From positions 1 through 64,000 of the IMG/VR virus record IMGVR_UViG_3300020186_000013: DNA of 64,000 bases; one strand, given 5' to 3'. The notes beneath the pieces are model-generated. The model saw only the letters and a list, made by a program, of their open reading frames with translations. It ran no database searches and had not been told where the DNA came from. A program made the position numbers and the translations under genes. Of the stretch, positions 11,309 to 29,614 are shown piece by piece; positions within the stretch are counted from its first letter, which is position 1, and each line of letters opens with the position of its first letter.

Positions 11309-13384
11309 CTTCTTGTTCGCCTTGCCACCCGCCGCCGGCGGCGGGGTGGCGGCAGGATTCTTGCGAGCCGCAGCACGGGCAGCAGCGGCCTTGGCAGCCT
11401 GAAGCGTGTTCGCCATCTCGGCGTCCTTCTTCTTGGGCGACGCCACGGCCTCAGCCTCCTCGGTCTGCGTCCCCTTCTTACTCGCCGGCTTGGCAGCCGC
11501 AGCGGCCGGCTTCGCAACCGGCTTCGCGACAGGAGCTGCCGGTTTGGCCGCTGGCTTCGCGACCGGCTTGGCGGCGATCACCTCATCGAACACCTCGTCA
11601 CCGCTCGGCTTGGACTTGGGCTTGCCCGCCTTCGGCTTCACCGGGGCGACGACTGCTTCTTCCTCTTCTTCCTCGTCACCCTCCTCATCTACCTCCTCGT
11701 CGTCGTCTTCGTCACCCTCTTCAGCTTCCCCTTCGTCAGCGTCGCCTGCTTCAGGGTCGGCGTCGTCGGCCTCCTCATCGTCCTCAGCTTCGACGTCATC
11801 ATCGTCGTCAGCGTCGTCACCGTCGTCACCGTCGTCACCGTCATCGGCATCTTCGTCTTCGCCATCCTCGTCCTCCTCTTCCTCCTCGTCATCATCGTCG
11901 GCCGGTGGTGGTGGCGGGGGAGGCGTCTTGCCCTTCTTGGTCTTGACCGGTTCCTCTTCCTCAACCGGCGGGTCCTCGTCATCGTCGCCAGCGGTCGTGC
12001 CCGGCAGCGTCGGCTGGCTCACGTCCTTGCCCGCCTTCTTCTTTTTCTTCGGAGCGACCGGCAGCTCGTCATCGTCCGCACCGACCACCACAGTGCCGTC
12101 ATCGTCGTCATCGCCCGTGTCGGCAGGAATGACTGCCTCACCCGGATTCACAAACGACTTCGCGTTCACCAGGATCGGCTTGATCTGCTTGAGCCACTCG
12201 GGGTGATCGTTCAGACCGAAGATCAAAATGCCCGGCTCCTTGGCGAAACACCGAGCCATGACGTCGAGCTGCTCCTCGGGAGTCATAACGCGGACGAGGC
12301 CCTTCTGTATCACCTTGCCGGCGGCGTCGACCATATCGAACCACGGCATGCTCTTGTTGAAAATCTCGTCAACGGCGTCACCTTCGAGATCCGGCGTAAA
12401 CTCCTCGTCGTCGATCTTGACGGACTTGAGCAGGGCGACCTGGTACTTCCAGATGCCATTCTCGCCGCCCTCGGGGGACTTGCCGTCCCACGACGTGCAC
12501 CGGGCCATGCCCTCCTTCTCGGGGTGTAACTTCTTGTTGAACCGGGGATTGAAGACCGCGACGATCTTGCCCCCGACGATCTTGTTCTCCTTCGGGCGGT
12601 ACACGCCCAACGGATCGTGCAGGAACATCTTGCGGTACTCGCCGGGCTGAGCAGCCTCGGCGTCCTTACGCTTGATATTCATCAGGTCCTGCAACCCCTG
12701 GCCGGCCGACGCCGACAGCTCCAGGACCACGAGCGGGTCGCCGGGGTTGAGGCCGTACGGCACCTCACGCGGCTTGCCGTCCTTGATCATGTACGACGTC
12801 GGGCCGACCTTGTAGACGCCGCCCTGGGCCAAGTACATGTCCTTCGGCCACGAGATGCAAGAGCCCTTGTTCTTCGACCCCACCATGTACTTGTTCCACG
12901 ACAGCTTCCACCCATCCGTGCTCTCGCCCTTGATCGACGCCTTGTGGGCGTCGGAGCAGGCGTTAATGAACGGGAAGAACGGACTCAGCGGGCGGATCGC
13001 CTGGTCGATCGTCGGGTCGTGCAGAACGAAGCTCACCTTCGGGCAGTCGGGGTGCCCGAAGTATGCCGCCACAGCCGGCAGGTGACAGAAGAACGGCGTG
13101 AAGCCGGTCAACTTGTCCGACTTACGCCAGCTCCGCAACTGGGTCGTCGGGTTCTCCATGGACAACGCCGGAGCGAGGCGGCAGTACAGCGGCTCGCCGT
13201 CGTACTTGCCACGGATCACCTTGTACTTCGGGATGTTGTCGGAATCGTTGCTCACGTTGAGCACCATGGAGGAACCGCTGCCGCGATCCTCCTTGCCGCC
13301 GTGCTTCTCGTTGTCGTACGTCTCGGTCGTCATCGACGGCAGGTTCCGCTTGATGCGTCCGCGAGACTTATCAGACTCAGCCAT
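11306..13384 (-). CDS. large protein with long acidic tract and AKP-rich tail; candidate ssDNA-binding protein
   Basis: Adjacent to recA; D/E-rich low-complexity region followed by AAKPVAKP repeats; function inferred from context. Confidence 0.55.
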   Translation of the reverse strand: MAESDKSRGRIKRNLPSMTTETYDNEKHGGKEDRGSGSSMVLNVSNDSDNIPKYKVIRGKYDGEPLYCRLAPALSMENPTTQLRSWRKSDKLTGFTPFFCHLPAVAAYFGHPDCPKVSFVLHDPTIDQAIRPLSPFFPFINACSDAHKASIKGESTDGWKLSWNKYMVGSKNKGSCISWPKDMYLAQGGVYKVGPTSYMIKDGKPREVPYGLNPGDPLVVLELSASAGQGLQDLMNIKRKDAEAAQPGEYRKMFLHDPLGVYRPKENKIVGGKIVAVFNPRFNKKLHPEKEGMARCTSWDGKSPEGGENGIWKYQVALLKSVKIDDEEFTPDLEGDAVDEIFNKSMPWFDMVDAAGKVIQKGLVRVMTPEEQLDVMARCFAKEPGILIFGLNDHPEWLKQIKPILVNAKSFVNPGEAVIPADTGDDDDDGTVVVGADDDELPVAPKKKKKAGKDVSQPTLPGTTAGDDDEDPPVEEEEPVKTKKGKTPPPPPPPADDDDEEEEEDEDGEDEDADDGDDGDDGDDADDDDDVEAEDDEEADDADPEAGDADEGEAEEGDEDDDEEVDEEGDEEEEEEAVVAPVKPKAGKPKSKPSGDEVFDEVIAAKPVAKPAAKPAAPVAKPVAKPAAAAAKPASKKGTQTEEAEAVASPKKKDAEMANTLQAAKAAAARAAARKNPAATPPPAAGGKANKK

Positions 13385-14078: not shown

Positions 14079-17000
14079 TCAGATCTTCTCGCCCCACCAG
14101 GTACAGATCTCCTTGTCGGACCCCAGGTAGTACGGCCCCCGGCCCTCGATCGGCGTGCCGTTGAGGCGGGTCGGGTAGATGGGGACCTGGGTGAGGCTCC
14201 ACGGGATCAGCACGTTGTGGATGTAGTCGCGATACTTCTTCTTGTTGCGGATCAGCAGTGCGTCATGGATCTGCAACTGCCAGTAAAAAATGTACTCACC
14301 GAACTCGGGCAGCAGTCGCTCCCGAGCCTGGTGAAGTACGGACAACCAACGGTCGACGAAGTCCGCAATCATGGACTGGATCGGGAAGTTCATCGCCTGC
14401 CGCTCGAACTCACCCTCCAGCTTGGAGTCGGAGGTCGCCGGGAAGCGACGCATCCGACCAAAGCAGTTGCACAGCCACCCGACGTTGACGGCCCGGAAGC
14501 GGGCCTCCGCGAAGAAGTCTTGCAACTCCGGGTACATCGCGAACACCGCGTCGATGACCGCCTGAGCGTCGTCGACGGACACCTCGGGCTCGCCCGGCTT
14601 CCGCTGCTCCTTCGCCGCCAGTGCAATCGCCTTGGCCTGGCGACCATACGCGATGCCGAAAATCACCGTCTTGGCGATGTTACGCAGGTGAACCTTGCCG
14701 ATCGACGCCAAGCCCGGCTTCGACGGGTGGCACGACAGCTTGAACGCCATCTTGGCGACCGAGCTGTGGATATCGTGGAACTCCGGGTGCGGGTACGGGC
14801 ACGTCTTGCACTTCTTCAGGGGTGCCCCGGCCTCGCCGTGCGTGCACCGCATGCCGTCGATCGAGTACCCGTCCTCGGCGTACGTCAGTGCCCGAGCCGT
14901 GTGGTCGATCATGAGGGTCGAGTTCGACATGATGGCCATGCCCCGAAGCTCGGCCCCCATGAGGTCCCGCTCGCCCAACTCCCACTCGTCCTCGGCGGTC
15001 GTCGCCACCCAGCCCTCGACCTTCTTGCCGTCCTTCCAGAACGTCTGTGGTGTCAGGGTGCCGGGCGGCGGCGACCGGAAGATCGACCGCAGCTTGTGCT
15101 TGTACAGCGTCTTGCCGTCGTCCCCGACCAGCAGCCGCTCGTAGTCCGGGTCGCGGGTCTTGCTGATGTTCTGCAAGTTCGGCCGCGACGACTTCCAGCG
15201 GCCGGTTTCCGCCGTCGGGTACAGGTGGGTCCGGACCATACCGTCGTCGTCGATGCACCCAGCGATACCCTCCGTGAACTCGTACTCCTCCCCGCCCTCG
15301 TCGTCAAGCAAGATGTTGCCCTGCTCGTCCTTCTGGGTGATCCAGTTCTGGTTCGCATCCTCCTCGGGCGTACGGAGCAGGCTCTTGAGCACCTGATCCA
15401 GGAAGCGGTAATCGCGGATCATGTTGATCTGATCCGCCACCTCCGGGTTCTCCTGGGCCAAGATCGCCAGGACCGCTTTGCCCGTGCCCGGCGTGTGGTC
15501 GCGAGTCCGCCCCATGGCGACGATATCGCTCCACTTCTTGGGCGGCTTGTCAGTCGTCAGCAAGGGCTCCACCCGCAGGCACTTAGCACCCTTGGGCCGG
15601 AGGCGAATCGGCTCGCCGTCCTTAGTCACCTTGCCGTTGTACTCGACCCCGAACAGAACCTCCTTTACGTGTTGCACACTGCGGATGTTGAACTCCGGCC
15701 ACCCGAACTCGTCGACAATAGCCTGCTCCAGGCTCGCCCGTGCGGTCGAGAAGTCACGGGTCAACTTCTTCACCCGCTTGATGTCAACGAAGATGCCCTG
15801 CTGGTGGATCTCCAGGATGATCGGCAGCGTCAACATGCTGCCGCCGAACGGCTCCCACACGCAGTTGAACTCGTAGTCCTCGTCGAGGTAGCCCATCGCC
15901 GTGACCGCGATGCGGCGGGTGGCGTCGGCGTCATAGTTGCCATACGGCACCAGGATGTCGTCCGGAATCTTGCCGTACCCTTCGAGGGCCTTCCGCTTGA
16001 TCTTCAACTGCTTACACAGCTCGACGACCGAGTCCTCCAGGGCGATGTCATACCGGGGACAGGTGGTGTACCGCATCGCCACCGACTCCAGTCCCAGCAA
16101 CGCTGTCTCCTCGATCGAGTGAATCATCATGCCGGTATCGAGCCCGCCCTCGCCCTGCATACACCGAACCCAGAACGGCGTGCCGTCCTCGGCGTCCTCG
16201 GTCGGAATGAAGAAACCCTTGCGGAAGTCGAACCCGTGGTAGACGAGGTGCTCCAAGTCAGCCACGAAGAAGTGGCCCACGATCCGGTACTGGTTGACGA
16301 ACTTCGTGGTCGCCTTGGCCAGCCGAGCGGTGGCGTCCTTGCCGTTCTTGTCCTTGAAGCAGCACTTGCCCTCGGTATCGTTGAGGACGAAGCAGATCGC
16401 CTTCTTGTGCCCCCACGACATCTGGATGGTGCGGACGTACGAGTTAGAGTTGACCGGGTGGGTGCCCTCCCACTCGGCGTCGATGGCGATGATGTTCATG
16501 CCTGGCGGCTCGTTCGCCAGGTCGGCAGCCGCCTCCTCCTCCCACGCCAGGTACTCTTCCCACGACGTACACTTGCGGTGGTCGATGTCGGTCTCGGTTA
16601 GCCCCGTCTTGGCCTCCTTGAGCACGAACGCGAACCGGCCGCACCCGCGTTCCAACGTCCGGCGGGACGCAGGGTCACGGGCCACCTGAGCAGGGTGTAC
16701 GACCGTCATGCACATCGCCTGGTGGATGATGGGCTCGCTGTCCTCATCGAAGTGAACCGGGAACTCGAACGGGACCAGCCGCCCCTCCATGTATCCGACA
16801 CCAGCCTTGCTGCCCAGGAGGGCTTTCGAGGCATCGGCCCCAAGCAGGAGGATGTAGTCCGGCTTGACGATGCGGAGTTCCTGGTGGAGCAGCGGCATGC
16901 AGTCCGCGATCCACCCCGACTTGAGCGTGGTCTGGTCGTCGGGGGGCATGAACTTCACCAAGCTGGTGACGTACCAATGGGCCATCTCCTGGCGACTAAT

Positions 17001-17552
17001 GCGGGCCTCGATCATGGCCTCCAACAGGATCTCTCCCGTCGAACCAACCAGGTAGCGGCACTTCTCGCTCTCCTCCTTCCACGGCATCTTGCCAATGACC
17101 ATCACCTTCGCAGGGTGCGGGCCGTCGGTCACCGGTGGCTTTACGTACGGGTCCATCTCAGACTGGATGAACGCCGCCATGTGCTGACCCCAGATGTGTC
17201 CGGGGACAAACGTCACCTCCTTCGGTGGCTGACCAGGGCGGACCTCGACCCGCAACGGGAACAGGGGCTCCCGGAGTGCCCGGCGGTAAAGCGTGTCCAA
17301 CCGCTGGGACGGCCGGTAAATGAGCTTCCCGGTCTTCTTCTCCTTCATGAAGACAGTCTTCAGCTCGGGCGGGTCGTCCTTCTCCTCGTGGTCTGTGAGC
17401 CGCAGGAAGTTCGGCCCCGGCGGGGGCATGCCGGGGGCGTTCCAGTGGTACGCCCCCCGGTTCAACATCATCTTCCGCTGGGTACGGACGACCTTCTTCT
17501 GAAGTTCCGCACCCAGAGTCACGACCCGACGCTTGAGCCGTTCAATTTCCAT
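14079..17552 (-). CDS. polA: family A DNA polymerase with N-terminal uracil-DNA-glycosylase-like domain and 3'-5' exonuclease
   Basis: UDG-like VMVIG...LVG.TG..L...ELRIVKP.YILLLG...VHPA; exo IAIDAE; TGRWKSSRPNLQNI; motif A DLMGAELR, motif B RNIAKTVIFGIAYG, motif C LQIHDAL. Confidence 0.92.
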   Translation of the reverse strand: MEIERLKRRVVTLGAELQKKVVRTQRKMMLNRGAYHWNAPGMPPPGPNFLRLTDHEEKDDPPELKTVFMKEKKTGKLIYRPSQRLDTLYRRALREPLFPLRVEVRPGQPPKEVTFVPGHIWGQHMAAFIQSEMDPYVKPPVTDGPHPAKVMVIGKMPWKEESEKCRYLVGSTGEILLEAMIEARISRQEMAHWYVTSLVKFMPPDDQTTLKSGWIADCMPLLHQELRIVKPDYILLLGADASKALLGSKAGVGYMEGRLVPFEFPVHFDEDSEPIIHQAMCMTVVHPAQVARDPASRRTLERGCGRFAFVLKEAKTGLTETDIDHRKCTSWEEYLAWEEEAAADLANEPPGMNIIAIDAEWEGTHPVNSNSYVRTIQMSWGHKKAICFVLNDTEGKCCFKDKNGKDATARLAKATTKFVNQYRIVGHFFVADLEHLVYHGFDFRKGFFIPTEDAEDGTPFWVRCMQGEGGLDTGMMIHSIEETALLGLESVAMRYTTCPRYDIALEDSVVELCKQLKIKRKALEGYGKIPDDILVPYGNYDADATRRIAVTAMGYLDEDYEFNCVWEPFGGSMLTLPIILEIHQQGIFVDIKRVKKLTRDFSTARASLEQAIVDEFGWPEFNIRSVQHVKEVLFGVEYNGKVTKDGEPIRLRPKGAKCLRVEPLLTTDKPPKKWSDIVAMGRTRDHTPGTGKAVLAILAQENPEVADQINMIRDYRFLDQVLKSLLRTPEEDANQNWITQKDEQGNILLDDEGGEEYEFTEGIAGCIDDDGMVRTHLYPTAETGRWKSSRPNLQNISKTRDPDYERLLVGDDGKTLYKHKLRSIFRSPPPGTLTPQTFWKDGKKVEGWVATTAEDEWELGERDLMGAELRGMAIMSNSTLMIDHTARALTYAEDGYSIDGMRCTHGEAGAPLKKCKTCPYPHPEFHDIHSSVAKMAFKLSCHPSKPGLASIGKVHLRNIAKTVIFGIAYGRQAKAIALAAKEQRKPGEPEVSVDDAQAVIDAVFAMYPELQDFFAEARFRAVNVGWLCNCFGRMRRFPATSDSKLEGEFERQAMNFPIQSMIADFVDRWLSVLHQARERLLPEFGEYIFYWQLQIHDALLIRNKKKYRDYIHNVLIPWSLTQVPIYPTRLNGTPIEGRGPYYLGSDKEICTWWGEKI

Positions 17553-20463: not shown

Positions 20464-21300
20464 TTACGTTCCTTTACCGAACGTCTCCGTGTAAAGACCG
20501 CGAGCATTGGCCACGAAGTCATCAGGCAAGAGACGACGCCAGTGCTTGAGGTATTGGGTTCTCTTTGACCAGAACTGAATGACCGCCCCTCGTTCGTGCA
20601 GGTTGGCAATCCTGTCGAATTCCGAGTTCTGTTCACTCAGCTCACGAGCAAGGCAATAACGAAACAGTGCGGACAGTTCCAGCTGCGGGTTAAGGAGGAC
20701 CAGGTACTGCGAGTTAAGCATCGTTTGCTTACCGCAGAGGTGCAGGAAGTTGATCTCCCGCATCGCCGTACTGGCTTGGTTCAGCAACGCATTCTTAACC
20801 AACACCCCGTTGGCGTCCGACAGCTCACACTCCCGGTAATAGTTCAGCCACGTTTTCGACAACAGCTGGTTAGGCTCCGGCGGGCAGTGGTCACCAAAGG
20901 CAGTCTTGGCGTGGTTGTCCGACGCATAGCCGAACACGCAGTGCGTGTACTCGACTGGGTCGATCTCCAGGGCTATGAACTTTCTCGCCAACTTCGGCCA
21001 CAAGGGGGCGGCGTTCTTCCCCTCCACGACAACGCCTTCAACCTCCACGGCACCGCCGCCCCGGTCGTAAAGCTGCGGCACCGTGTATCGGGTCAGTGTA
21101 CCGTTCAAGTATGTGTCGAAGGCACTCCGAGCATCAACATACGCTTCCCGCAGACGCAGGCCAATAGCCTCCTCTGCGGCGGTGACCTCCGCAACCGGCG
21201 GGGCCTTCTTCCTCTTGCGTGGCGACGGCTGATCGTCCGTGACGAGCCGACTCCGGGAATGGTCATTTTGCATGGTATTAACCCCACAACATTTTTTCAC
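20464..21300 (-). CDS. hypothetical protein between helicases
   Basis: 278-aa ORF in replication operon. Confidence 0.65.
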   Translation of the reverse strand: MKKCCGVNTMQNDHSRSRLVTDDQPSPRKRKKAPPVAEVTAAEEAIGLRLREAYVDARSAFDTYLNGTLTRYTVPQLYDRGGGAVEVEGVVVEGKNAAPLWPKLARKFIALEIDPVEYTHCVFGYASDNHAKTAFGDHCPPEPNQLLSKTWLNYYRECELSDANGVLVKNALLNQASTAMREINFLHLCGKQTMLNSQYLVLLNPQLELSALFRYCLARELSEQNSEFDRIANLHERGAVIQFWSKRTQYLKHWRRLLPDDFVANARGLYTETFGKGT

Positions 21301-22813
21301 GGAGCGATCCGGGCAACGGAGTATCGAGAGTCTTGATCTTCCACCGCAGAGCCTTGTAACTCTCCTTCCGACCGTCGGACTTCATATTCATCCCACGATT
21401 GAACTTGTCGACGTAGTCGTGAATGATCGCGAACTCCTTGTCCTCGTGCGTACGGCTGGTCCGACCAGGGACCTGGCTGTCGGCGATCCGGCTACCGCCT
21501 GCGTCGCCCCGCACCAACACACTCAGCCGCTTCGAGCTGAACCCGACGCCGAGCACGTCCGTCGAGATGAAGATCGGTATCTCGGCATCCCTGGCCTGCC
21601 GCGTCAGCATCACCCGTCTATCCACTGTCATCTCAGGCAGGTCGTCGATCGGCAGATTCCACCCGCGTAACTTGTTCACGAATGCCGGCGGCAGCTCCCG
21701 CTCCGAGTAGATCAGCGGCGGGTTGACGCCCTTCTTCTGGAACCGGATGAGCAACCGCAGGGCGTGTTCGAGCGTCTTGACATACACCATGACCGGGTCG
21801 TCTGGGTACGACGTCGCGTCCTTGACGATCAGGTCGTTTCGGTAGTCGTTGGACCAGACGCCGTGCCGCAGTTTGTCGGTGCCGATGCGGTCTCCGCAAG
21901 GGTCGACGTCCAGGATCACCTTGCGGAACCGGACCTCGATCGGAGCAACGCCACCGGCGGCGACAGCCTCCTGGTAGTGAACCTTCATCCGCACCGGCCC
22001 AAACATCCCCTCAACCCGCATGTCCTTCCCATCCATCCGCATGTCCATGGTCGCCGACAGGCCGTACATGCGGGGCTGACCGGGGATGAGGCCCATCTGG
22101 GTCGCGTAGTAGTCGGACCCGGCTTCGTGGCACTCGTCGAAGACGATGATGTCGTACGGGTCGTCGGCGACGAGGTGGGGGAGGCAGCCGGCACTGAAGC
22201 ACATGACCCGCTTACCACGGTCACGCTTGCCCGAGCAGACGAGGCCGACGGACGGGAGGTTGAGTCGCAACTCCGGGTAGATCTGGTCCCGGAGAATGGC
22301 GAGCCGCTTGCTCACAATCGCGATGCGGGCCGTCGGGAGCAGCTTGCAGATGCACCGAAGCAGGAAGCTCTTGCCCCACCCCGTCGGGCAATCGAACCGC
22401 CCGTTGTCGTACGTGACCAGCTTGGCCAGAAACTCGTCCTGGCGTTCCTTGAGCACCACGCCACTGTCGAACAGGTGGTCCCACAGCGGCTCGAACACCT
22501 TGGGGTTCTTGTGAGGCGTCAGGTTCTTCTCACGGACGGTGTAGCCCGCCTTCTTGAGCAGGACCGTCAAGCGGTCGGAGAACCCGTACGACGTGGCGAT
22601 CCGCCCCTTGTGGTCGTCCACGAAGCACTCCCATAGATTCTCCTCGAACGGGAGACGACCATTACGCTTCGCGTCGTACAGGTCCTTACCGTACAGGAAC
22701 TCCTTCTCCAAGAACGTCAGGGCCGGCTCGACGATTTGTCGGATGGCCGGCGTGGTCGGCTCAACCACGATCCGGTTCTGGGACCGGAGTAGCATTACTT
22801 CCGGCATTTTCAT
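21278..22813 (-). CDS. superfamily 2 helicase (UvsW/Hef-like)
   Basis: PTGWGKS, DECH, SAT, STDVLGVGF, QVPGRTSR. Confidence 0.9.
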   Translation of the reverse strand: MKMPEVMLLRSQNRIVVEPTTPAIRQIVEPALTFLEKEFLYGKDLYDAKRNGRLPFEENLWECFVDDHKGRIATSYGFSDRLTVLLKKAGYTVREKNLTPHKNPKVFEPLWDHLFDSGVVLKERQDEFLAKLVTYDNGRFDCPTGWGKSFLLRCICKLLPTARIAIVSKRLAILRDQIYPELRLNLPSVGLVCSGKRDRGKRVMCFSAGCLPHLVADDPYDIIVFDECHEAGSDYYATQMGLIPGQPRMYGLSATMDMRMDGKDMRVEGMFGPVRMKVHYQEAVAAGGVAPIEVRFRKVILDVDPCGDRIGTDKLRHGVWSNDYRNDLIVKDATSYPDDPVMVYVKTLEHALRLLIRFQKKGVNPPLIYSERELPPAFVNKLRGWNLPIDDLPEMTVDRRVMLTRQARDAEIPIFISTDVLGVGFSSKRLSVLVRGDAGGSRIADSQVPGRTSRTHEDKEFAIIHDYVDKFNRGMNMKSDGRKESYKALRWKIKTLDTPLPGSLREKMLWG

Positions 22814-22866: not shown

Positions 22867-23487
22867 TCAGGCAAGCTCGTCTGTTTCACACGAGAATGAG
22901 CCGTCGAGTTGGCAACTCGGCGGCTCGTTCTGTTTCTCCGGACCGCCGGATTCCATGTCTTGTTCGTGCTGCCTCCGTCGCGGACGCAACCCCTCTACCC
23001 CGAAGAAACCGTACTCCCCTGGCTTCCAAGGCGACAAGCCTCGGTACTGCCCAGAGAGTGCCATCAGACGCCAAAAGTCGTCGTCCGTTATTGTACTGGG
23101 GACGACGCAATTCAGCCCCACCACCTGACCGGCCAGAAACGCCTCATGTACGACGTACCGACGCTTCCCGTTGGACGCCCAGTAATACCGCCTATACCAG
23201 CCGTCGCCCTGCGGCAGGCCATCCACGTTGATGTCCCAAAGGATTTTGCCGACCTCGTCCTGATGCTTGCCCAGGAGCTGAGCGGCGAACCGCATATTGG
23301 CATGGTGCCAGCTCGCCAGGAACGTGACAGTCCCCGACGGGCTACGCGGCAGGGTGAAGGAGGCATCCTTCGCCCGACTCTTCACGCTACCCAGGCAATG
23401 CTTGGTGAAACTGATCCGGACCGTGAGTTCTCGCATGGCATCCTGCCCCAGTGTGTCCAATCTACCCGGACATGTCGCACGGCTCAA
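22867..23487 (-). CDS. RAMP (Cas7/Csm3-like) fold candidate
   Basis: N-terminal strand VRISFTKHCLG, FLASW..ANMR, E.F.AG..V.L, C-terminal Gly-rich loop GQYRGLSPWKPGEYGFF. Confidence 0.5.
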   Translation of the reverse strand: MSRATCPGRLDTLGQDAMRELTVRISFTKHCLGSVKSRAKDASFTLPRSPSGTVTFLASWHHANMRFAAQLLGKHQDEVGKILWDINVDGLPQGDGWYRRYYWASNGKRRYVVHEAFLAGQVVGLNCVVPSTITDDDFWRLMALSGQYRGLSPWKPGEYGFFGVEGLRPRRRQHEQDMESGGPEKQNEPPSCQLDGSFSCETDELA

Positions 23488-24470
23488 ACTGCGTTGTCGA
23501 GCGTCCGGAGGTGTACCGAGTAAGCGTCAACCTCTTCCGCACTCTTGAAGAACGACGACGGCAAGAAACCGCCCTCGGGGCGTGGGGCAGCGACTTCGCC
23601 GGACCACACCTCGTACAAGAACCGAACATACCGTCGCGTAGCTGCCATGGTCCCCTTGTGTGCCCCGCCAGCTGCCGCGTGTGCCCGCCACAGGAAGTGC
23701 TGCGGCCGAGTCCTATCCGTAACGCCGGTCCGCCCCAGCCACGACCGCATCAGCACCGTCAACCAATCGAAGTTCCGATCCCTGTCGTTGAAGTTCGTCA
23801 TCCAAGCGTGCATATTCTTGGGCGTCAGTCCCAGGTGCACATACAGCCGGCTCAGCCGGTGGGGCCGGGTCGGGTGCCGGAACCACCTCGGGTCGACGAT
23901 GCGGGCGGCAAGGAGGCACGCCGCGTCGTGGTCGCCCGACGGAATGAACGACACCGCCGGCCACAGCGGGTGGTAGCGGAAGATCCGCCGCACCTGCTCG
24001 TCGACCTCACCCTTGTTGTCTTTCAACGCCGCGATGATGGCGTACGTCGTGTAGTCCTTGTCACTCAGGTCGTGCCAGCACCCCGATGGCAGGACGGCGT
24101 ACTGCTGCCACAGGTGTGACAGCACGCGGGCCGGGCTGCCCCGGTCCTCGGCCGTGGGGCACACCATGGGGCTGCCCAGGACAACCCGCTGCCCGCGAGA
24201 CAGCGACTTGTTACGCACCCGCATATGGTGCAGGTACACGATCAACTCTGCGTTCGACGGCACCCCGAGGAGTCGGATCAGTCGAACCGACCCCAAGTTC
24301 ACGCCCAGCCACTTCAGCTTGTCGAAAAAGACGGCGACGGTACAGCGGGAGTTCTCCCCCACCGCACCGTCGTGCCCGTACCAGACGTGGCCCTGGTCGT
24401 CCGTGTGCAACCGCAGCAAGTCCACGACCGACGCGACGTCTTCTTCAAGCGGGACAAGGGGCATGGTCAC
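23484..24470 (-). CDS. Nop/IS110 C-terminal-domain protein (Tas-like)
   Basis: HPLWPAVSFIP.GD..AACLLAARIVDPRWF...SRLYVHLGLTP and H.G..AA.RR.VRFLYEVW; no DEDD RuvC recognised. Confidence 0.55.
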   Translation of the reverse strand: MTMPLVPLEEDVASVVDLLRLHTDDQGHVWYGHDGAVGENSRCTVAVFFDKLKWLGVNLGSVRLIRLLGVPSNAELIVYLHHMRVRNKSLSRGQRVVLGSPMVCPTAEDRGSPARVLSHLWQQYAVLPSGCWHDLSDKDYTTYAIIAALKDNKGEVDEQVRRIFRYHPLWPAVSFIPSGDHDAACLLAARIVDPRWFRHPTRPHRLSRLYVHLGLTPKNMHAWMTNFNDRDRNFDWLTVLMRSWLGRTGVTDRTRPQHFLWRAHAAAGGAHKGTMAATRRYVRFLYEVWSGEVAAPRPEGGFLPSSFFKSAEEVDAYSVHLRTLDNAV

Positions 24471-26599
24471 GCCTTCAGTTGGATCACCCGGTCGAACGCG
24501 GCCTTCAGCCCCTCGGCGTGGGTGATCACAATGAGTTGCTGCTTGCCCTTCACCTTCTTCGAGAAGTAGGTGATTGCCTGGGCAAGGAACTTGATGTTCT
24601 CGTCGTCCAAGTTGGCCGTCGGTTCGTCAAGCACGAGCATACCAAGACCCGACCGGTAGAGCGAGTTCACTGTGATCCAGAAGGCCACCGAAAGCACGCC
24701 CTTCTGCCCGCCCGACAGGGCCTCGGCCCGGTGCGGCGGGTCGCCCGGCTTGTGCACCAGGAAACTCAGTTCGGTGTCGGTCTCAACCCAGAACGGTGCC
24801 CCGAACAACTCCAACCCCTTGTTGACGTCCCCCTCCATCCGAGTCAGGTTGGCCTGGGCCACGGCCTGGGGCAGGGCCTGTTTGTGGAAGATGTCGCGGG
24901 TCAGTTGCAGGACCTTGGTCATCTCCTTCAGCTTGCGGCTCCGCTTCATGCGGGCCTTGGCCTGCTCGTACTGCGTCTTCTTGGCGGCGATCTGCGTGTT
25001 GATGCCGACCAGCTGGCCCTCCAGGTTGGCGATCTCCAGCTCGGCCGTGCGATGCTCCTTCAAGCGGATTTTGGCCTTCACCAACACCTCGTCGAGTACC
25101 TGGTTCTCGGACGCCGTCGTCAACAACTCGCGGATGTGACTGTCAACCGCAGCGAGCTGGGCCTCCTTCCGCGTCACCAACTTGGTCAGCCCCTCCCACT
25201 GCTTCTTCGCCCCCTCGGTCACCTCGGCGTTCTTCTCGTAGACCCGGATCGTCTCGGCCAGCTCCTCCTTGTCGCCGTCCGGGTACTGGAGGTCCTTGAT
25301 CGCCGCAAGGGCCTCCTCGTTCTCCTTGACCGCTGCGTCGTTGGTCGCCTTCCACTCGTTGTACTTGGCAAGGCTGGACTCGTACTCCTTCCAATGGGAG
25401 ATCAAAGATTGCAACTCGCTGATCTGGCCGGGGCGGTCGTTGTTGATGCCCCGTAGGTGCTTCAAGTGCGACTCAATCGCCGCGATCTCGGTGCTGCACG
25501 TCGGGCAATACATCATGCCCTTCTGGGAGAACAACGCGAGCGTCTTCTTGGCCTCCATCAGCTCCTGCGAGTACGCCGCCAGCTTCTGCTCGGCGTTGAC
25601 CGGCGGGGCCTTGGGCTTGAACGGCGGCTCCTTCTTCACCGTCAACAGCTTCTTACGTTCGAGCAACTTCTGCTTGCGGGCCTGCTGCTTCTCGCACTGC
25701 TCGAACGCCGCCAAGGCCGAGCGGGCCATGGTGGCGGGCTGGGCCATCGCGTCCGTCGCCTTCTTCAACCCCTCGTACGCCTTCTCCTGCTTCTTCGCGT
25801 TGGTGGTGACGCCACGCAACTCCTCACCTAGCGTGTCCGACTCCAGCTTAAGCGGCCCGAGGCGGGTCAGAGCCGCCGCCTGGCGTTCCGCCCGACGCAG
25901 GATCTCCTCGGCGTTCTCCTTGCGGGTCGGTTCGAGCTGCTTCTCCTTCTCCAAGGTGATCCGCAGGTTGATGTCGTCCCTCTGGTCCTTCAGCTCGCCG
26001 ATCTCGTGCGTCAACTCGTCCGTGTTGTCGACGGCCTGGTCGATGGCCTCGCGGTCCTTGGCGATCACCGACGCGAGCACGTCCTGCACCGTCTCGCAGT
26101 GCTCGGTGCCGTTCAAGGCCATGTACGCCTTGGCCCGGATGGCCGGCGTCGTGTGCAGGAAGTCGTCGAGGGCACCATCGACGGTCCCCGGCTGTCGCTT
26201 GAACACGGCGAAGTCAAGGATCTTCTTGTCGATGCCCAGACGCCGCAGCCGCTCCGTGCCTTCCTTGTCCGACGTGATGAGCTTCTCGTCGTTGACCTTC
26301 AGCTCGTACTTCGCCGGCCGCAGGGACCGTTTGATCGCGATGGTAGCGTCGTCGTGAACGATGGTCACCCGGATCGCCGACTCGTCGTCCTTGGTCGAGC
26401 GGTTGTTGATGACGTCCGTCCGGACGCCGTCGAACCGGCTAAAGTCGTTCGTGATGGCCGCGTAGATGGCGTCCACCAGGGTCGACTTGCCGGCCCCGTT
26501 GTCGGCCAAGATCACGTTGGCCCCGCGATCGAACTCGAAATCGTGCCGCCCGTAGAACGGCCCGATGTTCGTCAACGCCGCCTTTGTGATGTACATCAC
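24467..26599 (-). CDS. Rad50/SbcC-like SMC ATPase
   Basis: DNGAGKST, coiled coil with CPTC zinc hook, LSGGQ, LVLDEPT, ITH. Confidence 0.92.
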   Translation of the reverse strand: MMYITKAALTNIGPFYGRHDFEFDRGANVILADNGAGKSTLVDAIYAAITNDFSRFDGVRTDVINNRSTKDDESAIRVTIVHDDATIAIKRSLRPAKYELKVNDEKLITSDKEGTERLRRLGIDKKILDFAVFKRQPGTVDGALDDFLHTTPAIRAKAYMALNGTEHCETVQDVLASVIAKDREAIDQAVDNTDELTHEIGELKDQRDDINLRITLEKEKQLEPTRKENAEEILRRAERQAAALTRLGPLKLESDTLGEELRGVTTNAKKQEKAYEGLKKATDAMAQPATMARSALAAFEQCEKQQARKQKLLERKKLLTVKKEPPFKPKAPPVNAEQKLAAYSQELMEAKKTLALFSQKGMMYCPTCSTEIAAIESHLKHLRGINNDRPGQISELQSLISHWKEYESSLAKYNEWKATNDAAVKENEEALAAIKDLQYPDGDKEELAETIRVYEKNAEVTEGAKKQWEGLTKLVTRKEAQLAAVDSHIRELLTTASENQVLDEVLVKAKIRLKEHRTAELEIANLEGQLVGINTQIAAKKTQYEQAKARMKRSRKLKEMTKVLQLTRDIFHKQALPQAVAQANLTRMEGDVNKGLELFGAPFWVETDTELSFLVHKPGDPPHRAEALSGGQKGVLSVAFWITVNSLYRSGLGMLVLDEPTANLDDENIKFLAQAITYFSKKVKGKQQLIVITHAEGLKAAFDRVIQLKA

Positions 26600-27780
26600 C
26601 CCTCCAGTTGTTTAACACGCCAAGCCTCGATCTCGCGACGGACCTCTTCGGCACTCGTCTTGTTGATTAGAAGCTCGACCAGTTCTGTCACCTCGACCGT
26701 CAACCCCGACATGCCGTTGTCGACCAGGAACTGCTCGACGTACGGCCGGAACGTGTTCTCCAGGGACGCCACGCGGCCCTTGACGTCGACGACCGTGCTC
26801 TTGCCGTCGACCTTCTCCGGGCGTACCTCGCTCGGGAACAGGTGCACCCGGTCGCCGACCGCCTTCTGGATGCGTCGCCACGCCCCAGTCACCGACGCCG
26901 AGTACGCTACCCGCATGAGCGGCCGGAGCATGTCCTCCGGCAGGTTCGCGTTGGCACCCCGAGCGTACGCCTCGTCGATGAACCGCTCGATCTCTTCCAG
27001 GAACTCGGTCATGTCCTCCTCGGATAAGACCGACGCCGTGAGCATCTGCCGGGTGACCAGCGGGATACGGCGGAACGACCCGTCACTGCGGAAGGCGACG
27101 AAGAACTTGTCCTGGGGCTCGATGATGCTCTGGACCGACATCGACCCCGGATTGGTCACCAGGATCTTCTGCCCGTCCTTGCCGATCAACGTCTTGACGA
27201 TGGACTCGCCGTGGTAATCGCCGGTTGCCACGCGAACGATCGGCAGCGGGATGTCTGCGGCCGACATCTGGGGCGACGCGATGCTCCCCATGAAGTCCCC
27301 CCAGCACTGGTGCAGGAACAGCCCAGTCGCCTCACCGGGGATCTCGTTGGTCAGCCAGTCCTGGATTTCCGCCGCCGGGGCGTAGTCGTGGCCGGCCCAC
27401 ACAAAGTCGCCGATGGTGACGACCTTCTTGTGGACGTGCTGCACCATCGCGTCGTTGTCGAACAGCCACGGCAGCACGCCAGGACCGGCGTGGTCGTGGT
27501 TGCCCTGGATGAACAGGAAGTTGACGCCCCCGCCCGCCAGCTCCTTGAGCTTCATGCGGAGGGGGGTGACCGCCATGCTCAGGTTGCGGGCACGGTCCAG
27601 GGAGTCGCCGAGGTCGACGACCGTCTGGACAGTGGGGCTGTTGGTCGCGTAGTCGATGACCTGCTGCAATGCGTGCAGCGAGTCGTCAATGCCGCGACTC
27701 GGGTAGCCGCCCCCGCAGTGGAGGTCGGCGTAGAGCACGGCGATGTCTTTCGGCTCGGTGGTAGCCTTCGTCTTTGCCAT
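26596..27780 (-). CDS. Mre11/SbcD-like metallophosphoesterase nuclease
   Basis: ADLH, GDSLD, GNHD, LHQ, GDYH, NPGS. Confidence 0.9.
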   Translation of the reverse strand: MAKTKATTEPKDIAVLYADLHCGGGYPSRGIDDSLHALQQVIDYATNSPTVQTVVDLGDSLDRARNLSMAVTPLRMKLKELAGGGVNFLFIQGNHDHAGPGVLPWLFDNDAMVQHVHKKVVTIGDFVWAGHDYAPAAEIQDWLTNEIPGEATGLFLHQCWGDFMGSIASPQMSAADIPLPIVRVATGDYHGESIVKTLIGKDGQKILVTNPGSMSVQSIIEPQDKFFVAFRSDGSFRRIPLVTRQMLTASVLSEEDMTEFLEEIERFIDEAYARGANANLPEDMLRPLMRVAYSASVTGAWRRIQKAVGDRVHLFPSEVRPEKVDGKSTVVDVKGRVASLENTFRPYVEQFLVDNGMSGLTVEVTELVELLINKTSAEEVRREIEAWRVKQLEG

Positions 27781-27785
27781 GAATC

Positions 27786-27801
27786 TAGAATCCAGTTATT
27801 A
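27786..27801. promoter_or_regulatory. degenerate palindromic site TAGAATCCAGTTATTA
   Basis: Gene junction; variant of recurrent 16-mer. Confidence 0.45.
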
Positions 27802-28332
27802 GGTCCTGATCTTCTTCACGATCTCTGTCGTACTCATGCCGTCGAGCATCGGGGCGAACAGCACGCACCCGCCGTTCTTGATGACGAAGTCCTCGCCGAC
27901 GATGTCCTCGTCGTCGTAGTAGCCGCCGCCCTTGATGAGCAGGTCGGGCCTAATCGTCTCGATCAGCTGGAGAGGCGTCGACTCCTCGAAGCCCGTCACC
28001 CAGTCCACGCCCTTGACCTGCCGCACAGCCTCGGCCCGCTGCTTGAACGCGACGATCGGTCGGCCCTCGCCCTTGAGCTGCCTCACCGAGTGGTCGGAGT
28101 TCAACGCGACCACGAGCATCATCTTCTCGGGGTCGAGCCACGTCCGCGTCTTGGCGTACCGCAGCACGGCGAGGTGCCCGGCGTGAAGTAGGTCGAAGCA
28201 CCCGTTGACGACGACGACGAAACCATCCATCGCCTTCCATTCCTTCACCCGGTTCTTGAGCGGCCCGTCCTGGTGCCACATGCAGACATTCTCGTCCCTC
28301 AGCATCTCACAGTAACGACTACCCGTGGTCAT
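27799..28332 (-). CDS. rfaE2: D-glycero-beta-D-manno-heptose 1-phosphate adenylyltransferase (HldE domain II)
   Basis: NGCFDLLHAGH, VVALNSD.SVRQLKGEGRP, RPDLLIKGG, STTEIV. Confidence 0.85.
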   Translation of the reverse strand: MTTGSRYCEMLRDENVCMWHQDGPLKNRVKEWKAMDGFVVVVNGCFDLLHAGHLAVLRYAKTRTWLDPEKMMLVVALNSDHSVRQLKGEGRPIVAFKQRAEAVRQVKGVDWVTGFEESTPLQLIETIRPDLLIKGGGYYDDEDIVGEDFVIKNGGCVLFAPMLDGMSTTEIVKKIRT

Positions 28333-29369
28333 CTCTTCTCCTGGTAAGCCTTCCCGAGATCTTCCGTCGTGAGTTTGTAAACCCCCTGATAGGCCACCGC
28401 CAGCGACGCAGCCAAGTTAGCCCGCTTCACGGCACCGTCAATATCATCGCGGTCCGACTCGGACGCCCCCACGAACCAGTCCGCCATCGCCGCCAGGAAC
28501 GTGTCCCCGGCCCCCGTCGTGTCGAGAAGGACTCGGGGGGTCGTCGGCGGCATTCGGGTCAGTAACCCGGTGTCCGTTCCGAAGATGGCACCGTACTGCC
28601 CGAGCGTGATGATCACGTACTCGAACGAAATGTCCGCGTCCTTGGCCATCTTCCGGTATAGGGTGTCAAACAACTGGAAGTGGGACTCCTCGATGTCGAC
28701 CGGCCTATACCGCCGCAACTCTTTGGCCAGCTTGGTGCCCTCCAAGCCACTGAATGCGATCGCCTCATCCAGGTTGCACTTGAAGATCGCCCGGTTGTGA
28801 CTGTACTTATGCCACCCCCGAGGGTCTCGCGGCGGGTCGATCAAGACGGTCAGGTGGTAGAGGCGGGCAAACGACAGCACGGCCCGAACGAACCGTTCCG
28901 ATAGGAAGCCCTTGTTGTAGTCCGAGAACACGATCACAGGTCGACAGCTCTCGACGGCGACGGTCACCTGCGTTAATGCCTCGTCGAACCAGTTGTCGGC
29001 CGGGCTGACGAGCATCTCGCGATCCAGCCGCATGAGTTGCCCGGACCTGGTGACAAATCGGTGCTTTACCGTCGTGACGTGCTCCGGCCAGGCGGCCAGC
29101 CAAGCGTCGATCTTGTTATCCGCACACAACTGCTGCACGATCTTCCCGTGCGTATCGTCGCCAACGAGTCCGAACAGCATCACCCGCCGGTCGAGACCCG
29201 CCAAGTTCGCCGCGACGTTGGCCGCACCGCCCAGGTTGTACGTCGTGCCCTCGTCCTTGAGGACGAGGACGTGATCATGCTCGGGCGACACCCCGCTCAC
29301 CGTGCCGCTAGTCGTAACGTCGAGCATCACGTCACCGATGACGATGACGTGCGGCTTCTCAGAACCCAT
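28329..29369 (-). CDS. rfaE1: heptose-7-phosphate kinase (HldE domain I, PfkB family)
   Basis: VIGDVMLD, LGGAANVAANL, TTVKHR, SDYNKG, DTTGAGDTF. Confidence 0.85.
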   Translation of the reverse strand: MGSEKPHVIVIGDVMLDVTTSGTVSGVSPEHDHVLVLKDEGTTYNLGGAANVAANLAGLDRRVMLFGLVGDDTHGKIVQQLCADNKIDAWLAAWPEHVTTVKHRFVTRSGQLMRLDREMLVSPADNWFDEALTQVTVAVESCRPVIVFSDYNKGFLSERFVRAVLSFARLYHLTVLIDPPRDPRGWHKYSHNRAIFKCNLDEAIAFSGLEGTKLAKELRRYRPVDIEESHFQLFDTLYRKMAKDADISFEYVIITLGQYGAIFGTDTGLLTRMPPTTPRVLLDTTGAGDTFLAAMADWFVGASESDRDDIDGAVKRANLAASLAVAYQGVYKLTTEDLGKAYQEKR

Positions 29370-29380
29370 GCTTACTCCTG

Positions 29381-29614
29381 CTATGTTGAGTCGTTGAAGT
29401 ATCTTCGGATGGCGTTGCGGACGTCGGACATCCTGGCCACCCGCGTCGCGGAGGCGTCCTCGCCCCGCTTACAGCGGTCGCACCGGCGTATCCTCTCCCG
29501 GTCGGGGGAGAGGAACTCTCGGCCGCACTTCATACAGTTACGCTTTCCCGGAACAGAAGCGTGGGGCATCTTGCCCGCACTGCCTTGACCGGGGTCGGGT
29601 CCTTCCGTGACCAT
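29381..29614 (-). CDS. small zinc-ribbon protein
   Basis: RNCMKCGREF.S....RRCDRC. Confidence 0.55.
   Translation of the reverse strand: MVTEGPDPGQGSAGKMPHASVPGKRNCMKCGREFLSPDRERIRRCDRCKRGEDASATRVARMSDVRNAIRRYFNDST

What the first reader, a model, noticed from the sequence alone, without database searches (positions are those of the whole stretch)
22867..24470. Coupled Nop/IS110-like and RAMP (Cas7-like) genes inside the replication operon: candidate RNA-guided module
Seen: two translationally coupled ORFs sit between Rad50 and the SF2 helicase, with no transposon ends, cas genes or CRISPR array nearby. One has the Nop/IS110 RNA-binding signature and the other a RAMP-like Gly-rich C-terminal loop. 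Established: both folds bind guide RNAs (IS110 bridge RNA, box C/D Nop, TIGR-Tas; class 1 CRISPR Cas7). From memory, and to be verified, phage RAMP proteins with GGY/NN repeat RNAs have also been reported. Inference: the pair could be a domesticated two-component RNP for transcription control, recombination or phage-phage competition, with guides encoded elsewhere.
Basis: inference. Interest (0 to 1): 0.82.

Follow-up and report, generated by a model that had tools for sequence, protein, structure and literature searches.

The report
Array-less Vipr RAMP with dead IS110/Tas partner
Two genes in the DNA-replication block of an uncultured 208-kb phage descend from two different RNA-guided families (a Vipr/Cas7-like RAMP and a nuclease-dead IS110/TIGR-Tas-like protein), yet no guide-RNA array was found near them, which suggests RNA-guided machinery was turned into a core phage function.

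Summary

- **geneB (22867-23436, -)** models confidently as a minimal RAMP. All 50 best PDB matches are Cas7-type subunits. Profile comparison places it in the recently described phage Vipr family (hhalign 94%, E 9e-8).
- **geneA (23484-24464, -)** has a RuvC/RNase-H-like N-terminal domain and a Nop/Tnp-like helical domain. Its best structural match is the IS621 bridge recombinase, and 78 of 134 family members weakly hit the TIGR-Tas model. It lacks the DEDD acidic residues and any conserved serine.
- **Synteny:** the order SbcD-SbcC-geneA-geneB-helicase is kept in about 95% of some 80 related metagenomic phage loci. Four loci have geneB without geneA.
- **Conservation:** geneB is the most conserved protein of the module, ahead of the DNA polymerase.
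- **Guides:** no GGY/NN, other 5-nt-periodic or TIGR-like array was found in the window, in about 60 kb more of this genome, or within 10 kb in about 100 relatives. The one array found belongs to a separate canonical VIPR.
- **Coupling:** geneB starts at an ATG 47 nt after geneA, so that pair is not translationally coupled.

Verdict: an array-less variant of a known kind. Its ligand and function are unresolved.

The parts
23484..24464 (-). geneA: 326-aa nuclease-dead IS110/TasR-like protein. The alternative GTG start at 24470 overlaps the SbcC stop.
   Evidence: ORF. The family has 946 representatives at 50% identity. AF2 model pLDDT 94.4, pTM 0.92. Top Foldseek hit is the IS621 recombinase 8wt6_A over 338 columns, prob 0.98, TM 0.37-0.39.
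24015..24425 (-). geneA N-terminal RNase-H/RuvC-like domain (aa ~14-150), without a DEDD catalytic set
   Evidence: The strand-helix order of the model fits an RNase-H-like fold. Fold hits include YeaZ and retroviral integrase cores. Only one acidic column (D137) is conserved at 70% or more in this domain across 134 sequences, and no serine column reaches 80% anywhere in the protein.
23817..24041 (-). geneA Nop/Tnp-like helix-hairpin-helix region (aa ~142-216; motif IVDPRWFRHPxRPxRLSRLxxxLGLTPxN)
   Evidence: NCBIfam NF052498 TIGR_Tas_endo is hit by 78 of 134 members, best E 3.8e-6. PHROG 4285 'transposase' is hit by 67 of 134, best E 8.3e-6. The nearest named Atlas clusters carry Transposase_20, a weak lead only. 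The motif is visible in the alignment.
22867..23436 (-). geneB: 189-aa Vipr-family minimal RAMP (Cas7-like). The true start is the ATG at 23436.
   Evidence: AF2 model pLDDT 89.3. All 50 top PDB hits are Cas7-type RAMPs, best E 7.5e-6. BFVD top hits are small viral RAMPs. A profile of array-adjacent Viprs plus SUSP1 Vipr against the geneB family gives hhalign Prob 94.4%, E 9.2e-8 over 151 columns. HMM hits are reciprocal.
22999..23052 (-). geneB G-loop (aa 129-146, GQYRGLSPWKPGEYGFFG)
   Evidence: G129, Y131, G133, S135, P136 and G143 are invariant. The loop aligns to the SUSP1 Vipr G-loop GNLCGVGDWRPRFGRF, with D177->P136, W178->W137 and R179->K138.
23137..23199 (-). geneB beta-hairpin (aa 80-100), the putative thumb, carrying conserved K91, R93 and H97
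   Evidence: Strands 80-86 and 92-100 in the model. Conserved basic columns. H97 aligns with SUSP1 R138, but that part of the alignment has low confidence.
23437..23483 (-). 47-nt spacer between geneA and geneB, with a Shine-Dalgarno sequence (23441-23449) and a TAGATT element (23459-23464)
   Evidence: Sequence. TAGAAT/TAAAAT-like elements recur in the equivalent spacers of some relatives (L002, L005, L008). The simple sigma-70 scan does not call a promoter here.
24467..27780 (-). SbcC/Rad50-like (24467-26599) and SbcD/Mre11-like (26596-27780) genes. geneA and geneB end this gene string.
   Evidence: Pfam SMC_N and AAA_23, PHROG 77 SbcC-like. Metallophos is recorded for the SbcD-position gene in relatives. 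Overlapping junctions. Conserved order. Terminator-like hairpins follow geneB in the L014-L026 subgroup.
21278..22813 (-). SF2 DNA helicase immediately downstream (53-nt gap), followed by the DnaB-like helicase, primase and PolA genes
   Evidence: PHROG 16 DNA helicase, E 9e-36. PHROG 19, 47 and 17 for the next genes.

Best explanation
**What is shown.** geneB is a divergent member of the Vipr family, the minimal Cas7-like RAMPs of phages. geneA is a catalytically inactive relative of the IS110 recombinase / TasR group: a RuvC-like fold plus a Nop/Tnp helical domain. They lie together at the end of the SbcD-SbcC gene string in the replication module of a large, uncultivated clade of roughly 200-kb phages, and no guide array is linked to them.

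**What is inferred.**
- geneB still forms a filament on a single-stranded nucleic acid. It would use helix-1, the G-loop and the thumb, which are its best-conserved parts.
- This clade has fixed geneB as a core, array-independent factor of its own DNA replication or recombination, working beside SbcCD. It may hold or pair single strands, R-loops or triplex-like intermediates.
- geneA would be a usually present but dispensable nucleic-acid-binding adaptor.
For: Identity:
- RAMP fold: all 50 best PDB hits are Cas7-type RAMPs; BFVD hits agree.
- Vipr homology. The SUSP1 Vipr was located and its named residues checked.
- IS110/Tas relation of geneA.
- Loss of catalytic residues in geneA.

Core rather than arms-race character:
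- geneB has median identity 48.5% to its orthologues. PolA has 41.9%, primase 39.8%, SF2 helicase 39.7%, SbcC 33% and DnaB 27.8%.
- Its position after SbcC is fixed in about 100 loci from marine, freshwater, saline and soil metagenomes.
- Junctions with SbcC are tight, and terminators follow geneB in one subgroup.

Array independence:
- My period-5 detector finds 117 of 120 canonical VIPR loci and SUSP1.
- It finds nothing in the window, in contig positions 64-106 kb, in about 19 kb on the other side, or within +-10 kb of relatives.
- D177, which SUSP1 Vipr needs for silencing, is an invariant Pro here.
- geneB persists next to SbcC where geneA is absent.
Against: - No experiment or co-fold links geneB to SbcCD. 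Adjacency may only reflect shared timing of expression.
- Both proteins come from families whose only known role is RNA-guided DNA targeting.
- The strongly conserved G-loop and helix-1 would fit recognition of a specific repeated RNA motif equally well.
- About 76-93 kb of this genome (roughly 106/113 to 189/199 kb) was not scanned.
- A single short or degenerate guide, or one with a periodicity my detectors do not model, could have been missed.
- The phage's SSB and recombinase genes were not inventoried.
Confidence: 0.42

Rival explanations
1. It is a working VIPR-like RNA-guided DNA-binding system whose guides are unlinked or non-canonical. geneB would polymerise on a repeat RNA encoded more than 10 kb away, or supplied in trans. 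geneA would be its accessory (Vap-like) protein. The complex would silence genes of competitors, of the host, or of the phage's own temporal programme.
For: - geneB is homologous to Vipr, with a conserved G-loop, helix-1 and thumb basic residues.
- Dead TasR proteins are RNA-guided repressors (bioRxiv 10.64898/2026.09.09.750476).
- VIPR loci normally pair vipr with one accessory gene.
- Non-GGY repeat units exist, and vrRNAs can be separated from vipr as orphans.
- SUSP1's own VIPR lies among replication genes.
- Roughly 40% of this genome is unscanned.
Against: - About 100 loci have no array within 10 kb, whereas 115 of the 120 array-selected IMG/VR loci carry a Vipr ORF (jackhmmer hits in 115 loci). 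The single apparent exception (L014) has its own canonical vipr.
- No 5-nt periodicity of any motif was found in about 125 kb of this phage or a near-identical sister contig.
- D177 is replaced by an invariant Pro, and H17, E71 and M72 are not conserved.
- Conservation higher than the polymerase is atypical for conflict genes.
Confidence: 0.3
2. The two genes are neighbours only. geneA and geneB have separate functions and do not form a complex. They stay adjacent through operon inheritance.
For: - geneB is found without geneA in L019, L250/L251 and L287.
- Their conservation differs widely, 34% against 48.5%.
- geneB has its own ribosome-binding site, and the spacer varies from 0 to 384 nt.
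- geneA's HMM finds nothing in 120 canonical VIPR loci.
Against: - Adjacency holds in about 95% of loci across very divergent phages.
- It would be a striking coincidence for both to derive from guide-RNA-binding families.
Confidence: 0.12
3. geneB is a decoy or counter-measure. An orphan Vipr would capture the vrRNAs of competing VIPR-carrying elements (or host crRNAs), or would be armed by vrRNAs supplied by other elements.
For: - VIPR conflicts include redirection of Vipr by foreign orphan vrRNAs.
- A relative (L014) carries a canonical VIPR in addition to geneB. This shows that these phages live with VIPR systems.
Against: - The GGY-reading residues are not conserved.
- The universal, fixed, highly conserved position in the replication operon does not look like an accessory counter-defence gene.
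Confidence: 0.08
4. The resemblances are fold convergence or noise, and neither protein is related to RNA-guided systems.
For: - There is no Pfam hit and no PDB sequence hit.
- geneA's TM-score to IS621 is only 0.37-0.39.
Against: - Sequence-profile evidence independent of the fold supports both relationships: for geneA, and for geneB.
- The fold hits for geneB are unanimous.
Confidence: 0.04

Closest known systems
VIPR systems (Vipr + Vap + vrRNA; bioRxiv 10.64898/2026.04.26.720920, .720927 and 2026.10.15.759431)
   Same: - geneB is a ~20-kDa single-RRM RAMP with G-loop and thumb.
- It is phage-encoded, homologous to Vipr by profile comparison, and paired with one accessory gene.
- The G-loop motif G-x-x-x-G-[VL]-[GS]-x-W-[RK]-P...[FY]G-x-F is shared with SUSP1 Vipr.
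   Different: - There is no adjacent GGY/NN or other 5-nt repeat array.
- D177 is replaced by an invariant Pro, and H17, E71 and M72 are not kept.
- The accessory protein is IS110/Tas-like. Described Vaps are WH/HTH binders, HNH nucleases or helicases.
- The gene is a fixed, highly conserved member of a replication/recombination operon, not a variable conflict locus.
TIGR-Tas, especially TasR with an inactivated RuvC domain (PMC12045711; bioRxiv 10.64898/2026.09.09.750476)
   Same: - geneA combines a RuvC-like N-terminal fold lacking catalytic residues with a Nop-type helical domain.
- Most family members weakly match the NCBIfam Tas model.
- It is phage-borne.
   Different: - Scores are far below the family cut-off (about 15 bits for the window protein against 100).
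- No TIGR array is adjacent or found anywhere scanned.
- No Tas protein has been reported next to a RAMP.
IS110-family bridge recombinases (IS621, PDB 8wt6/8wt9)
   Same: The two-domain architecture is shared, and IS621 is the best structural match over the full length. The Tnp-like motif (IPG..A..L.A.I.D..RF.....L..Y.GL.P) is recognisable.
   Different: - No DEDD residues and no catalytic serine.
- No Pfam PF01548 or PF02371 hit.
- No transposon ends or bridge-RNA region.
- Syntenic rather than mobile.
Class 1 CRISPR Cas7 backbone subunits (Csm3, Cmr4, type IV Csf2, type VII Cas7)
   Same: RAMP fold with thumb and G-loop. These are the best solved-structure matches (TM about 0.55).
   Different: - No cas genes and no CRISPR array.
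- A single minimal RRM.
- Sequence affinity is to Vipr, not to any Cas7 family.

Membership tests
VIPR (Vipr protein) | RAMP fold: RRM core, glycine-rich loop and thumb hairpin | tested here: met
   AF2 model pLDDT 89.3 with beta-alpha-beta-beta-alpha-beta order, an inserted hairpin at aa 80-100 and a G-loop at aa 129-146. All 50 top PDB hits are Cas7-type RAMPs.
VIPR (Vipr protein) | Sequence homology to the Vipr family | tested here: met
   A profile of 70 array-adjacent Viprs plus SUSP1 Vipr against the geneB family gives hhalign Prob 94.4%, E 9.2e-8. The same profile without SUSP1 finds SUSP1 Vipr at E 3.9e-48. Hits are reciprocal: E 1.2e-5, 5e-12 to 1e-8 and 8e-4.
VIPR (system) | vrRNA genes (tandem GGY/NN or related 5-nt repeats plus tail) flanking vipr | tested here: not met
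   The best run in the window is 5 of 8 units, which equals the shuffle level. Period-5 power peaks at 11.9, below the 12.5 threshold that detects 117 of 120 true loci. The any-motif scan scores 21 of 30 against 26 for a true array. About 100 related loci are negative. The unscanned 106-199 kb of the genome leaves a distant array possible.
VIPR (Vipr protein) | GGY-reading residues of SUSP1 Vipr (H17, R138, D177, W178, R179; E71/M72) | tested here: not met
   The alignment gives D177->P136 (invariant), W178->W137, R179->K138, R138->H97 (low-confidence region), H17->S17 and E71/M72->A41/S42. D177A abolishes silencing in SUSP1.
VIPR (system) | One adjacent accessory (vap) gene of the described kinds (WH/HTH binder, HNH nuclease, helicase) | tested here: inconclusive
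   geneA is adjacent in about 95% of loci. It is IS110/Tas-like, and its HMM hits nothing in 120 canonical VIPR loci.
TIGR-Tas | Nop-type RNA-binding domain reaching the family model's cut-off | tested here: not met
   The window protein scores 14.9 bits against NF052498, whose cut-off is 100. 78 of 134 relatives hit it weakly, best E 3.8e-6. This indicates remote homology, not membership.
TIGR-Tas | Adjacent TIGR array (36-nt units with edge and loop repeats, or stem-loop units) | tested here: not met
   TRF finds nothing of that kind. Lag 14-80 autocorrelation finds only coding repeats at multiples of 3. The flanks of geneA are coding.
IS110 bridge recombinase | DEDD RuvC-like catalytic residues and the catalytic serine in the Tnp domain | tested here: not met
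   One conserved acidic column (D137) in aa 14-150, and no serine column at 80% or more across 134 sequences.
IS110 bridge recombinase | Pfam DEDD_Tnp_IS110 + Transposase_20 domains; a mobile unit with ends and a bridge RNA | tested here: not met
   0 of 134 members hit either Pfam model at E<=1. NF033542 is hit by 2 of 134. Fixed synteny in about 100 loci.
IS110 bridge recombinase | Overall two-domain fold | tested here: inconclusive
   8wt6_A is the top hit over 338 columns with prob 0.98, but E is 0.015 and TM 0.37-0.39. A domain-wise superposition could not be run.
Class 1 CRISPR-Cas (Cas7) | cas operon and CRISPR array | tested here: not met
   No arrays, no PADLOC hit, and the neighbours are replication genes.

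The most novel reading that the evidence does not exclude
A Vipr-derived RAMP filament has been recruited into phage DNA metabolism. It would coat single strands made by SbcCD, or a conserved phage transcript, and use Vipr's triplex / strand-handoff chemistry for homology search, annealing, or R-loop opening of an origin. The dead IS110/Tas-like protein would act as loader or DNA clamp. That would be an RNA-guided-system fold working as a replication or recombination enzyme, and a first link between the Vipr and Nop/IS110 lineages.
Probability: 0.15. Interest if true: 0.95.

Novelty: new variant of a known kind. Interest (0 to 1): 0.72.

Why it matters
VIPR, TIGR-Tas and IS110 bridge systems are the newest families of RNA-guided DNA-targeting machinery. 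Each is defined by a protein plus a linked guide locus.

This locus differs in three ways:
- A Vipr homologue and an IS110/Tas-like protein are paired with each other, a combination not mentioned in the papers I could search.
- They have no detectable array.
- They are among the most conserved genes of the replication module in a globally distributed clade of giant phages.

If the pair still uses RNA, it is a new system type with unlinked or unrecognised guides and a new accessory protein. If it does not, it is a clear case of RNA-guided hardware being taken over for core DNA metabolism. That bears on the proposed origin of RAMPs in viruses. Either outcome can be tested with two small proteins.

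Tried and rejected
1. **The 13-unit GGY/NN array in relative L014 (2230-3203).** It first looked like geneB's missing guides. I rejected this because the ORF just upstream (L014:1508-2200) is a canonical Vipr and the ORF just downstream is a Vap-like gene found next to Viprs elsewhere. Its tail motif occurs as an array in no other IMG/VR contig.
3. **Contig walking with the look-up of encoding contigs.** It reached 106 kb with DNA, about 113 kb as a gene map only, and about 19 kb on the other side through a sister contig.
4. **Sequence searches.** No Pfam hits, only chance-level PDB sequence matches at E of 0.19 or higher and none for the deep geneA profile, no Rfam family reaching its gathering threshold, and no PADLOC hits.
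5. **Cultured phages.** Megablast and tblastn against 50,697 records found no relative of either protein. PolA is at most about 30% identical over partial length.
6. **Species genomes.** Only 2 hits, both MAG contigs, so no host clue.
7. **RNA sequencing runs.** None was listed.
8. **A sigma-70 promoter in the geneA-geneB spacer.** The scan does not call one.
9. **The strong hairpin inside geneA as a conserved RNA element.** It is not positionally conserved in orthologues.
Full report
**1. The observation**

Two minus-strand ORFs fill 22867-24470. They lie between an SbcC/Rad50-like gene (24467-26599) and an SF2 helicase (21278-22813). SbcD lies further upstream, and the DnaB-like helicase, primase and PolA genes lie downstream.

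geneA abuts the SbcC stop codon, either as a GTGA overlap or as an ATG 2 nt later.

geneB does not overlap geneA in reality. Every homologue begins MRELTV, and M1, R2 and E3 are invariant or nearly so. The start is therefore the ATG at 23436, behind a GGGGCAGGA Shine-Dalgarno sequence and 47 nt after geneA's stop. In relatives this spacer varies from 0 to 384 nt.

The window has no tandem array other than coding repeats, no Rfam match, and one doubtful tRNA call.

**2. geneB is a Vipr-family RAMP**

- With 64 homologues, AlphaFold gives pLDDT 89.3. The model has a ferredoxin/RRM core, an inserted beta-hairpin (aa 80-100) and a glycine-rich loop before the last strand.
- All 50 best Foldseek matches in the PDB are Cas7-type subunits: Csm3, type VII Cas7, Cmr4, Csf2 and gRAMP. 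The best E is 7.5e-6 and TM is about 0.55.
- The best matches among viral models are small phage RAMPs.
That system has a ~20-kDa Vipr RAMP, an accessory Vap, and vrRNAs of 9-16 YNNGG repeats plus a tail. It silences competing elements through gapped pairing.

I collected 120 IMG/VR loci with GGYNN arrays. The ORFs next to those arrays form one family.

- A profile of 70 of them finds SUSP1 Vipr at E 3.9e-48.
- With SUSP1 added, the profile aligns to the geneB family with hhalign probability 94.4% and E 9.2e-8 over 151 columns.
- The reverse searches agree.

I located SUSP1 Vipr at KT454805 28474-29061. Eight of the nine residues named in the cryo-EM preprint match that sequence.

The G-loops align (GNLCGVGDWRPRFGRF against GQYRGLSPWKPGEYGFF). 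However, D177, which reads the first G and is essential for silencing, is an invariant proline in the geneB family. H17, E71 and M72 are not kept either. W178 and R179 correspond to W137 and K138.

**3. geneA is a nuclease-dead IS110/TasR-like protein**

- The exhaustive search shows a large family, with 946 representatives at 50% identity.
- With 134 sequences the model reaches pLDDT 94.4 and pTM 0.92. It shows an RNase-H/RuvC-like N-terminal domain followed by a helical domain.
- The best PDB match is the IS621 bridge recombinase over the full length (338 columns, probability 0.98). TM is only 0.37-0.39, as might be expected if the two domains are oriented differently; I could not test this. 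RNase-H-fold proteins follow in the list.
- Independently of the fold, 78 of 134 family members hit NCBIfam TIGR_Tas_endo (best E 3.8e-6) and 67 of 134 hit PHROG 4285 'transposase' (best E 8.3e-6). Both hits cover aa ~142-216, where the motif IVDPRWFRHPxRPxRLSRLxxxLGLTPxN resembles the IS110 Tnp / Nop helix-hairpin-helix.
- No member hits the Pfam IS110 models.
- Only one acidic column is conserved in the N-terminal domain, and no serine column is conserved anywhere. Neither RuvC-type cleavage nor IS110-type serine chemistry is therefore expected.
- Dead TasR proteins are known RNA-guided repressors, but those have arrays.

**4. Context and distribution**

The order SbcD-SbcC-geneA-geneB-helicase-...-DnaB-primase-PolA is kept in all long contigs examined.

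- geneA lies directly upstream of geneB in 30 of 31 IMG/VR loci, and in 48 of 51 metagenome loci with enough DNA.
- In L019, L250/L251 and L287, geneB follows SbcC directly.
- geneB is the most conserved protein of the module. Its median identity to orthologues is 48.5%, against 41.9% for PolA, about 40% for primase and helicase, 34% for geneA, 33% for SbcC and 28% for DnaB.
- Neither protein has a homologue in any cultured phage record. The 185,579 species genomes give only two MAG contigs.
- The contigs come from many kinds of environment.
- The window is positions 1-64000 of a 208,145-bp JGI contig.

**5. The search for guides**

The window has no GGY/NN run above shuffle level, no period-5 G signal, and no 5-nt periodicity of any motif. 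Periodicities at 4-12 nt or 14-80 nt appear only in coding repeats.

The period-5 detector finds 117 of 120 true VIPR loci and SUSP1, and flags 2 of 78 random viral loci.

| Region scanned | Result |
|---|---|
| Same contig, 66.3-106.4 kb | negative |
| 64-66 kb, from a near-identical contig | negative |
| Gene map to about 113 kb (no DNA) | no gap over 130 nt |
| About 19 kb beyond the window's start, sister contig | negative |
| 31 + 76 related loci | negative |

The single exception among relatives is L014, whose 13-unit array belongs to a complete canonical VIPR inserted nearby.

Roughly 76-93 kb of this genome remains unscanned. No RNA run was listed.

**6. Interpretation**

The homology statements are well supported. 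The function is inferred.

Three things argue that this clade uses a Vipr-type nucleic-acid filament protein as a core factor tied to SbcCD and replication, rather than as a variable weapon:
- conservation higher than the polymerase;
- an invariant place at the end of the SbcCD string;
- persistence of geneB without geneA, together with the lack of a linked array and the loss of a key GGY-reading residue.

The main rival is a true RNA-guided system with distant or unrecognised guides. It is favoured by the ancestry of both proteins and by the conserved G-loop. I rate the two readings 0.42 and 0.30.

**7. Novelty**

The VIPR and TIGR-Tas papers I could search mention no IS110/Nop-type accessory, no RAMP-Tas pairing and no array-less Vipr. 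Only the converse, orphan vrRNAs, is described. The supplementary tables of the VIPR preprint were not available. I therefore cannot exclude that this clade sits inside one of its seven types. I file the locus as a new variant of a known kind.

Noticed in passing
L014:1508-3764 (IMGVR_UViG_3300016667_000797): A complete canonical VIPR system sits about 1.3 kb upstream of SbcD (about 6 kb upstream of geneB) in a relative. It has a 230-aa Vipr, 13 vrRNA units of GGY/NN repeats each ending in a GGCCGNAAGGCTAG hairpin (GNRA loop), and a 176-aa Vap-like gene. This phage therefore carries both a canonical Vipr and the geneB-type Vipr.
   Followed up: yes
window 24325-24372 (-): A 16-17-bp hairpin followed by UUUUU lies inside geneA (codons ~32-48). 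Its energy is -36.7 kcal/mol with z -5.05, and 0 of 200 shuffles fold as well. It looks like a terminator or attenuator, but it is not at a conserved position in orthologues.
   Followed up: partly
L019:9981-10001; L250:5691-5794; L287:9807-10001: In four loci (L019, L250, L251, L287) geneB follows SbcC directly, with no geneA between them.
   Followed up: partly
intergenic region after geneB in e.g. L012, L026, L270, L273-L276: The motif GGTTCCGGTGTG(T)T recurs just after a hairpin downstream of geneB, ahead of the helicase gene. It may be a phage promoter. It is absent from the window's 53-nt gap.
   Followed up: no
window 2152-4269 (-): A 705-aa ORF of the Thy1/ThyX family is about twice the usual length, which suggests an inserted element such as an intein.
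   Followed up: no
window 29496-29593 (-): ARAGORN calls a 98-nt tRNA-Arg(TCT). It lies inside a small Cys-rich (zinc-ribbon-like) ORF (29381-29614); ORFs of similar size occupy the same place in relatives (L001, L005), though I did not compare their sequences. The tRNA call is doubtful.
   Followed up: partly
L315:17008-18423 (sister contig Ga0163144_10000211): A 471-aa tubulin-family (PhuZ-like) gene lies in the region that precedes the window's start in a closely related contig.
   Followed up: no
window 14079-17552 (-): The family-A DNA polymerase carries an N-terminal uracil-DNA-glycosylase-like domain, as recorded for its orthologues in relatives.
   Followed up: no
window 27799-29369 (-): A PfkB-type sugar kinase and a cytidylyltransferase-like gene (an RfaE-like pair) sit directly next to SbcD, and glycosyltransferases lie further along the contig. 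This may be a nucleotide-sugar or DNA-modification pathway.
   Followed up: no
window position 1: The 208-kb and 215-kb assemblies of this phage both end within about 170 bp of window position 1. That points to a real genome end or a terminal repeat.
   Followed up: no
window 11640-11900 (-): Acidic 9/12/27-nt coding repeats lie inside a 697-aa ORF of unknown function. They are the source of all the strong tandem-repeat signals in the window.
   Followed up: no
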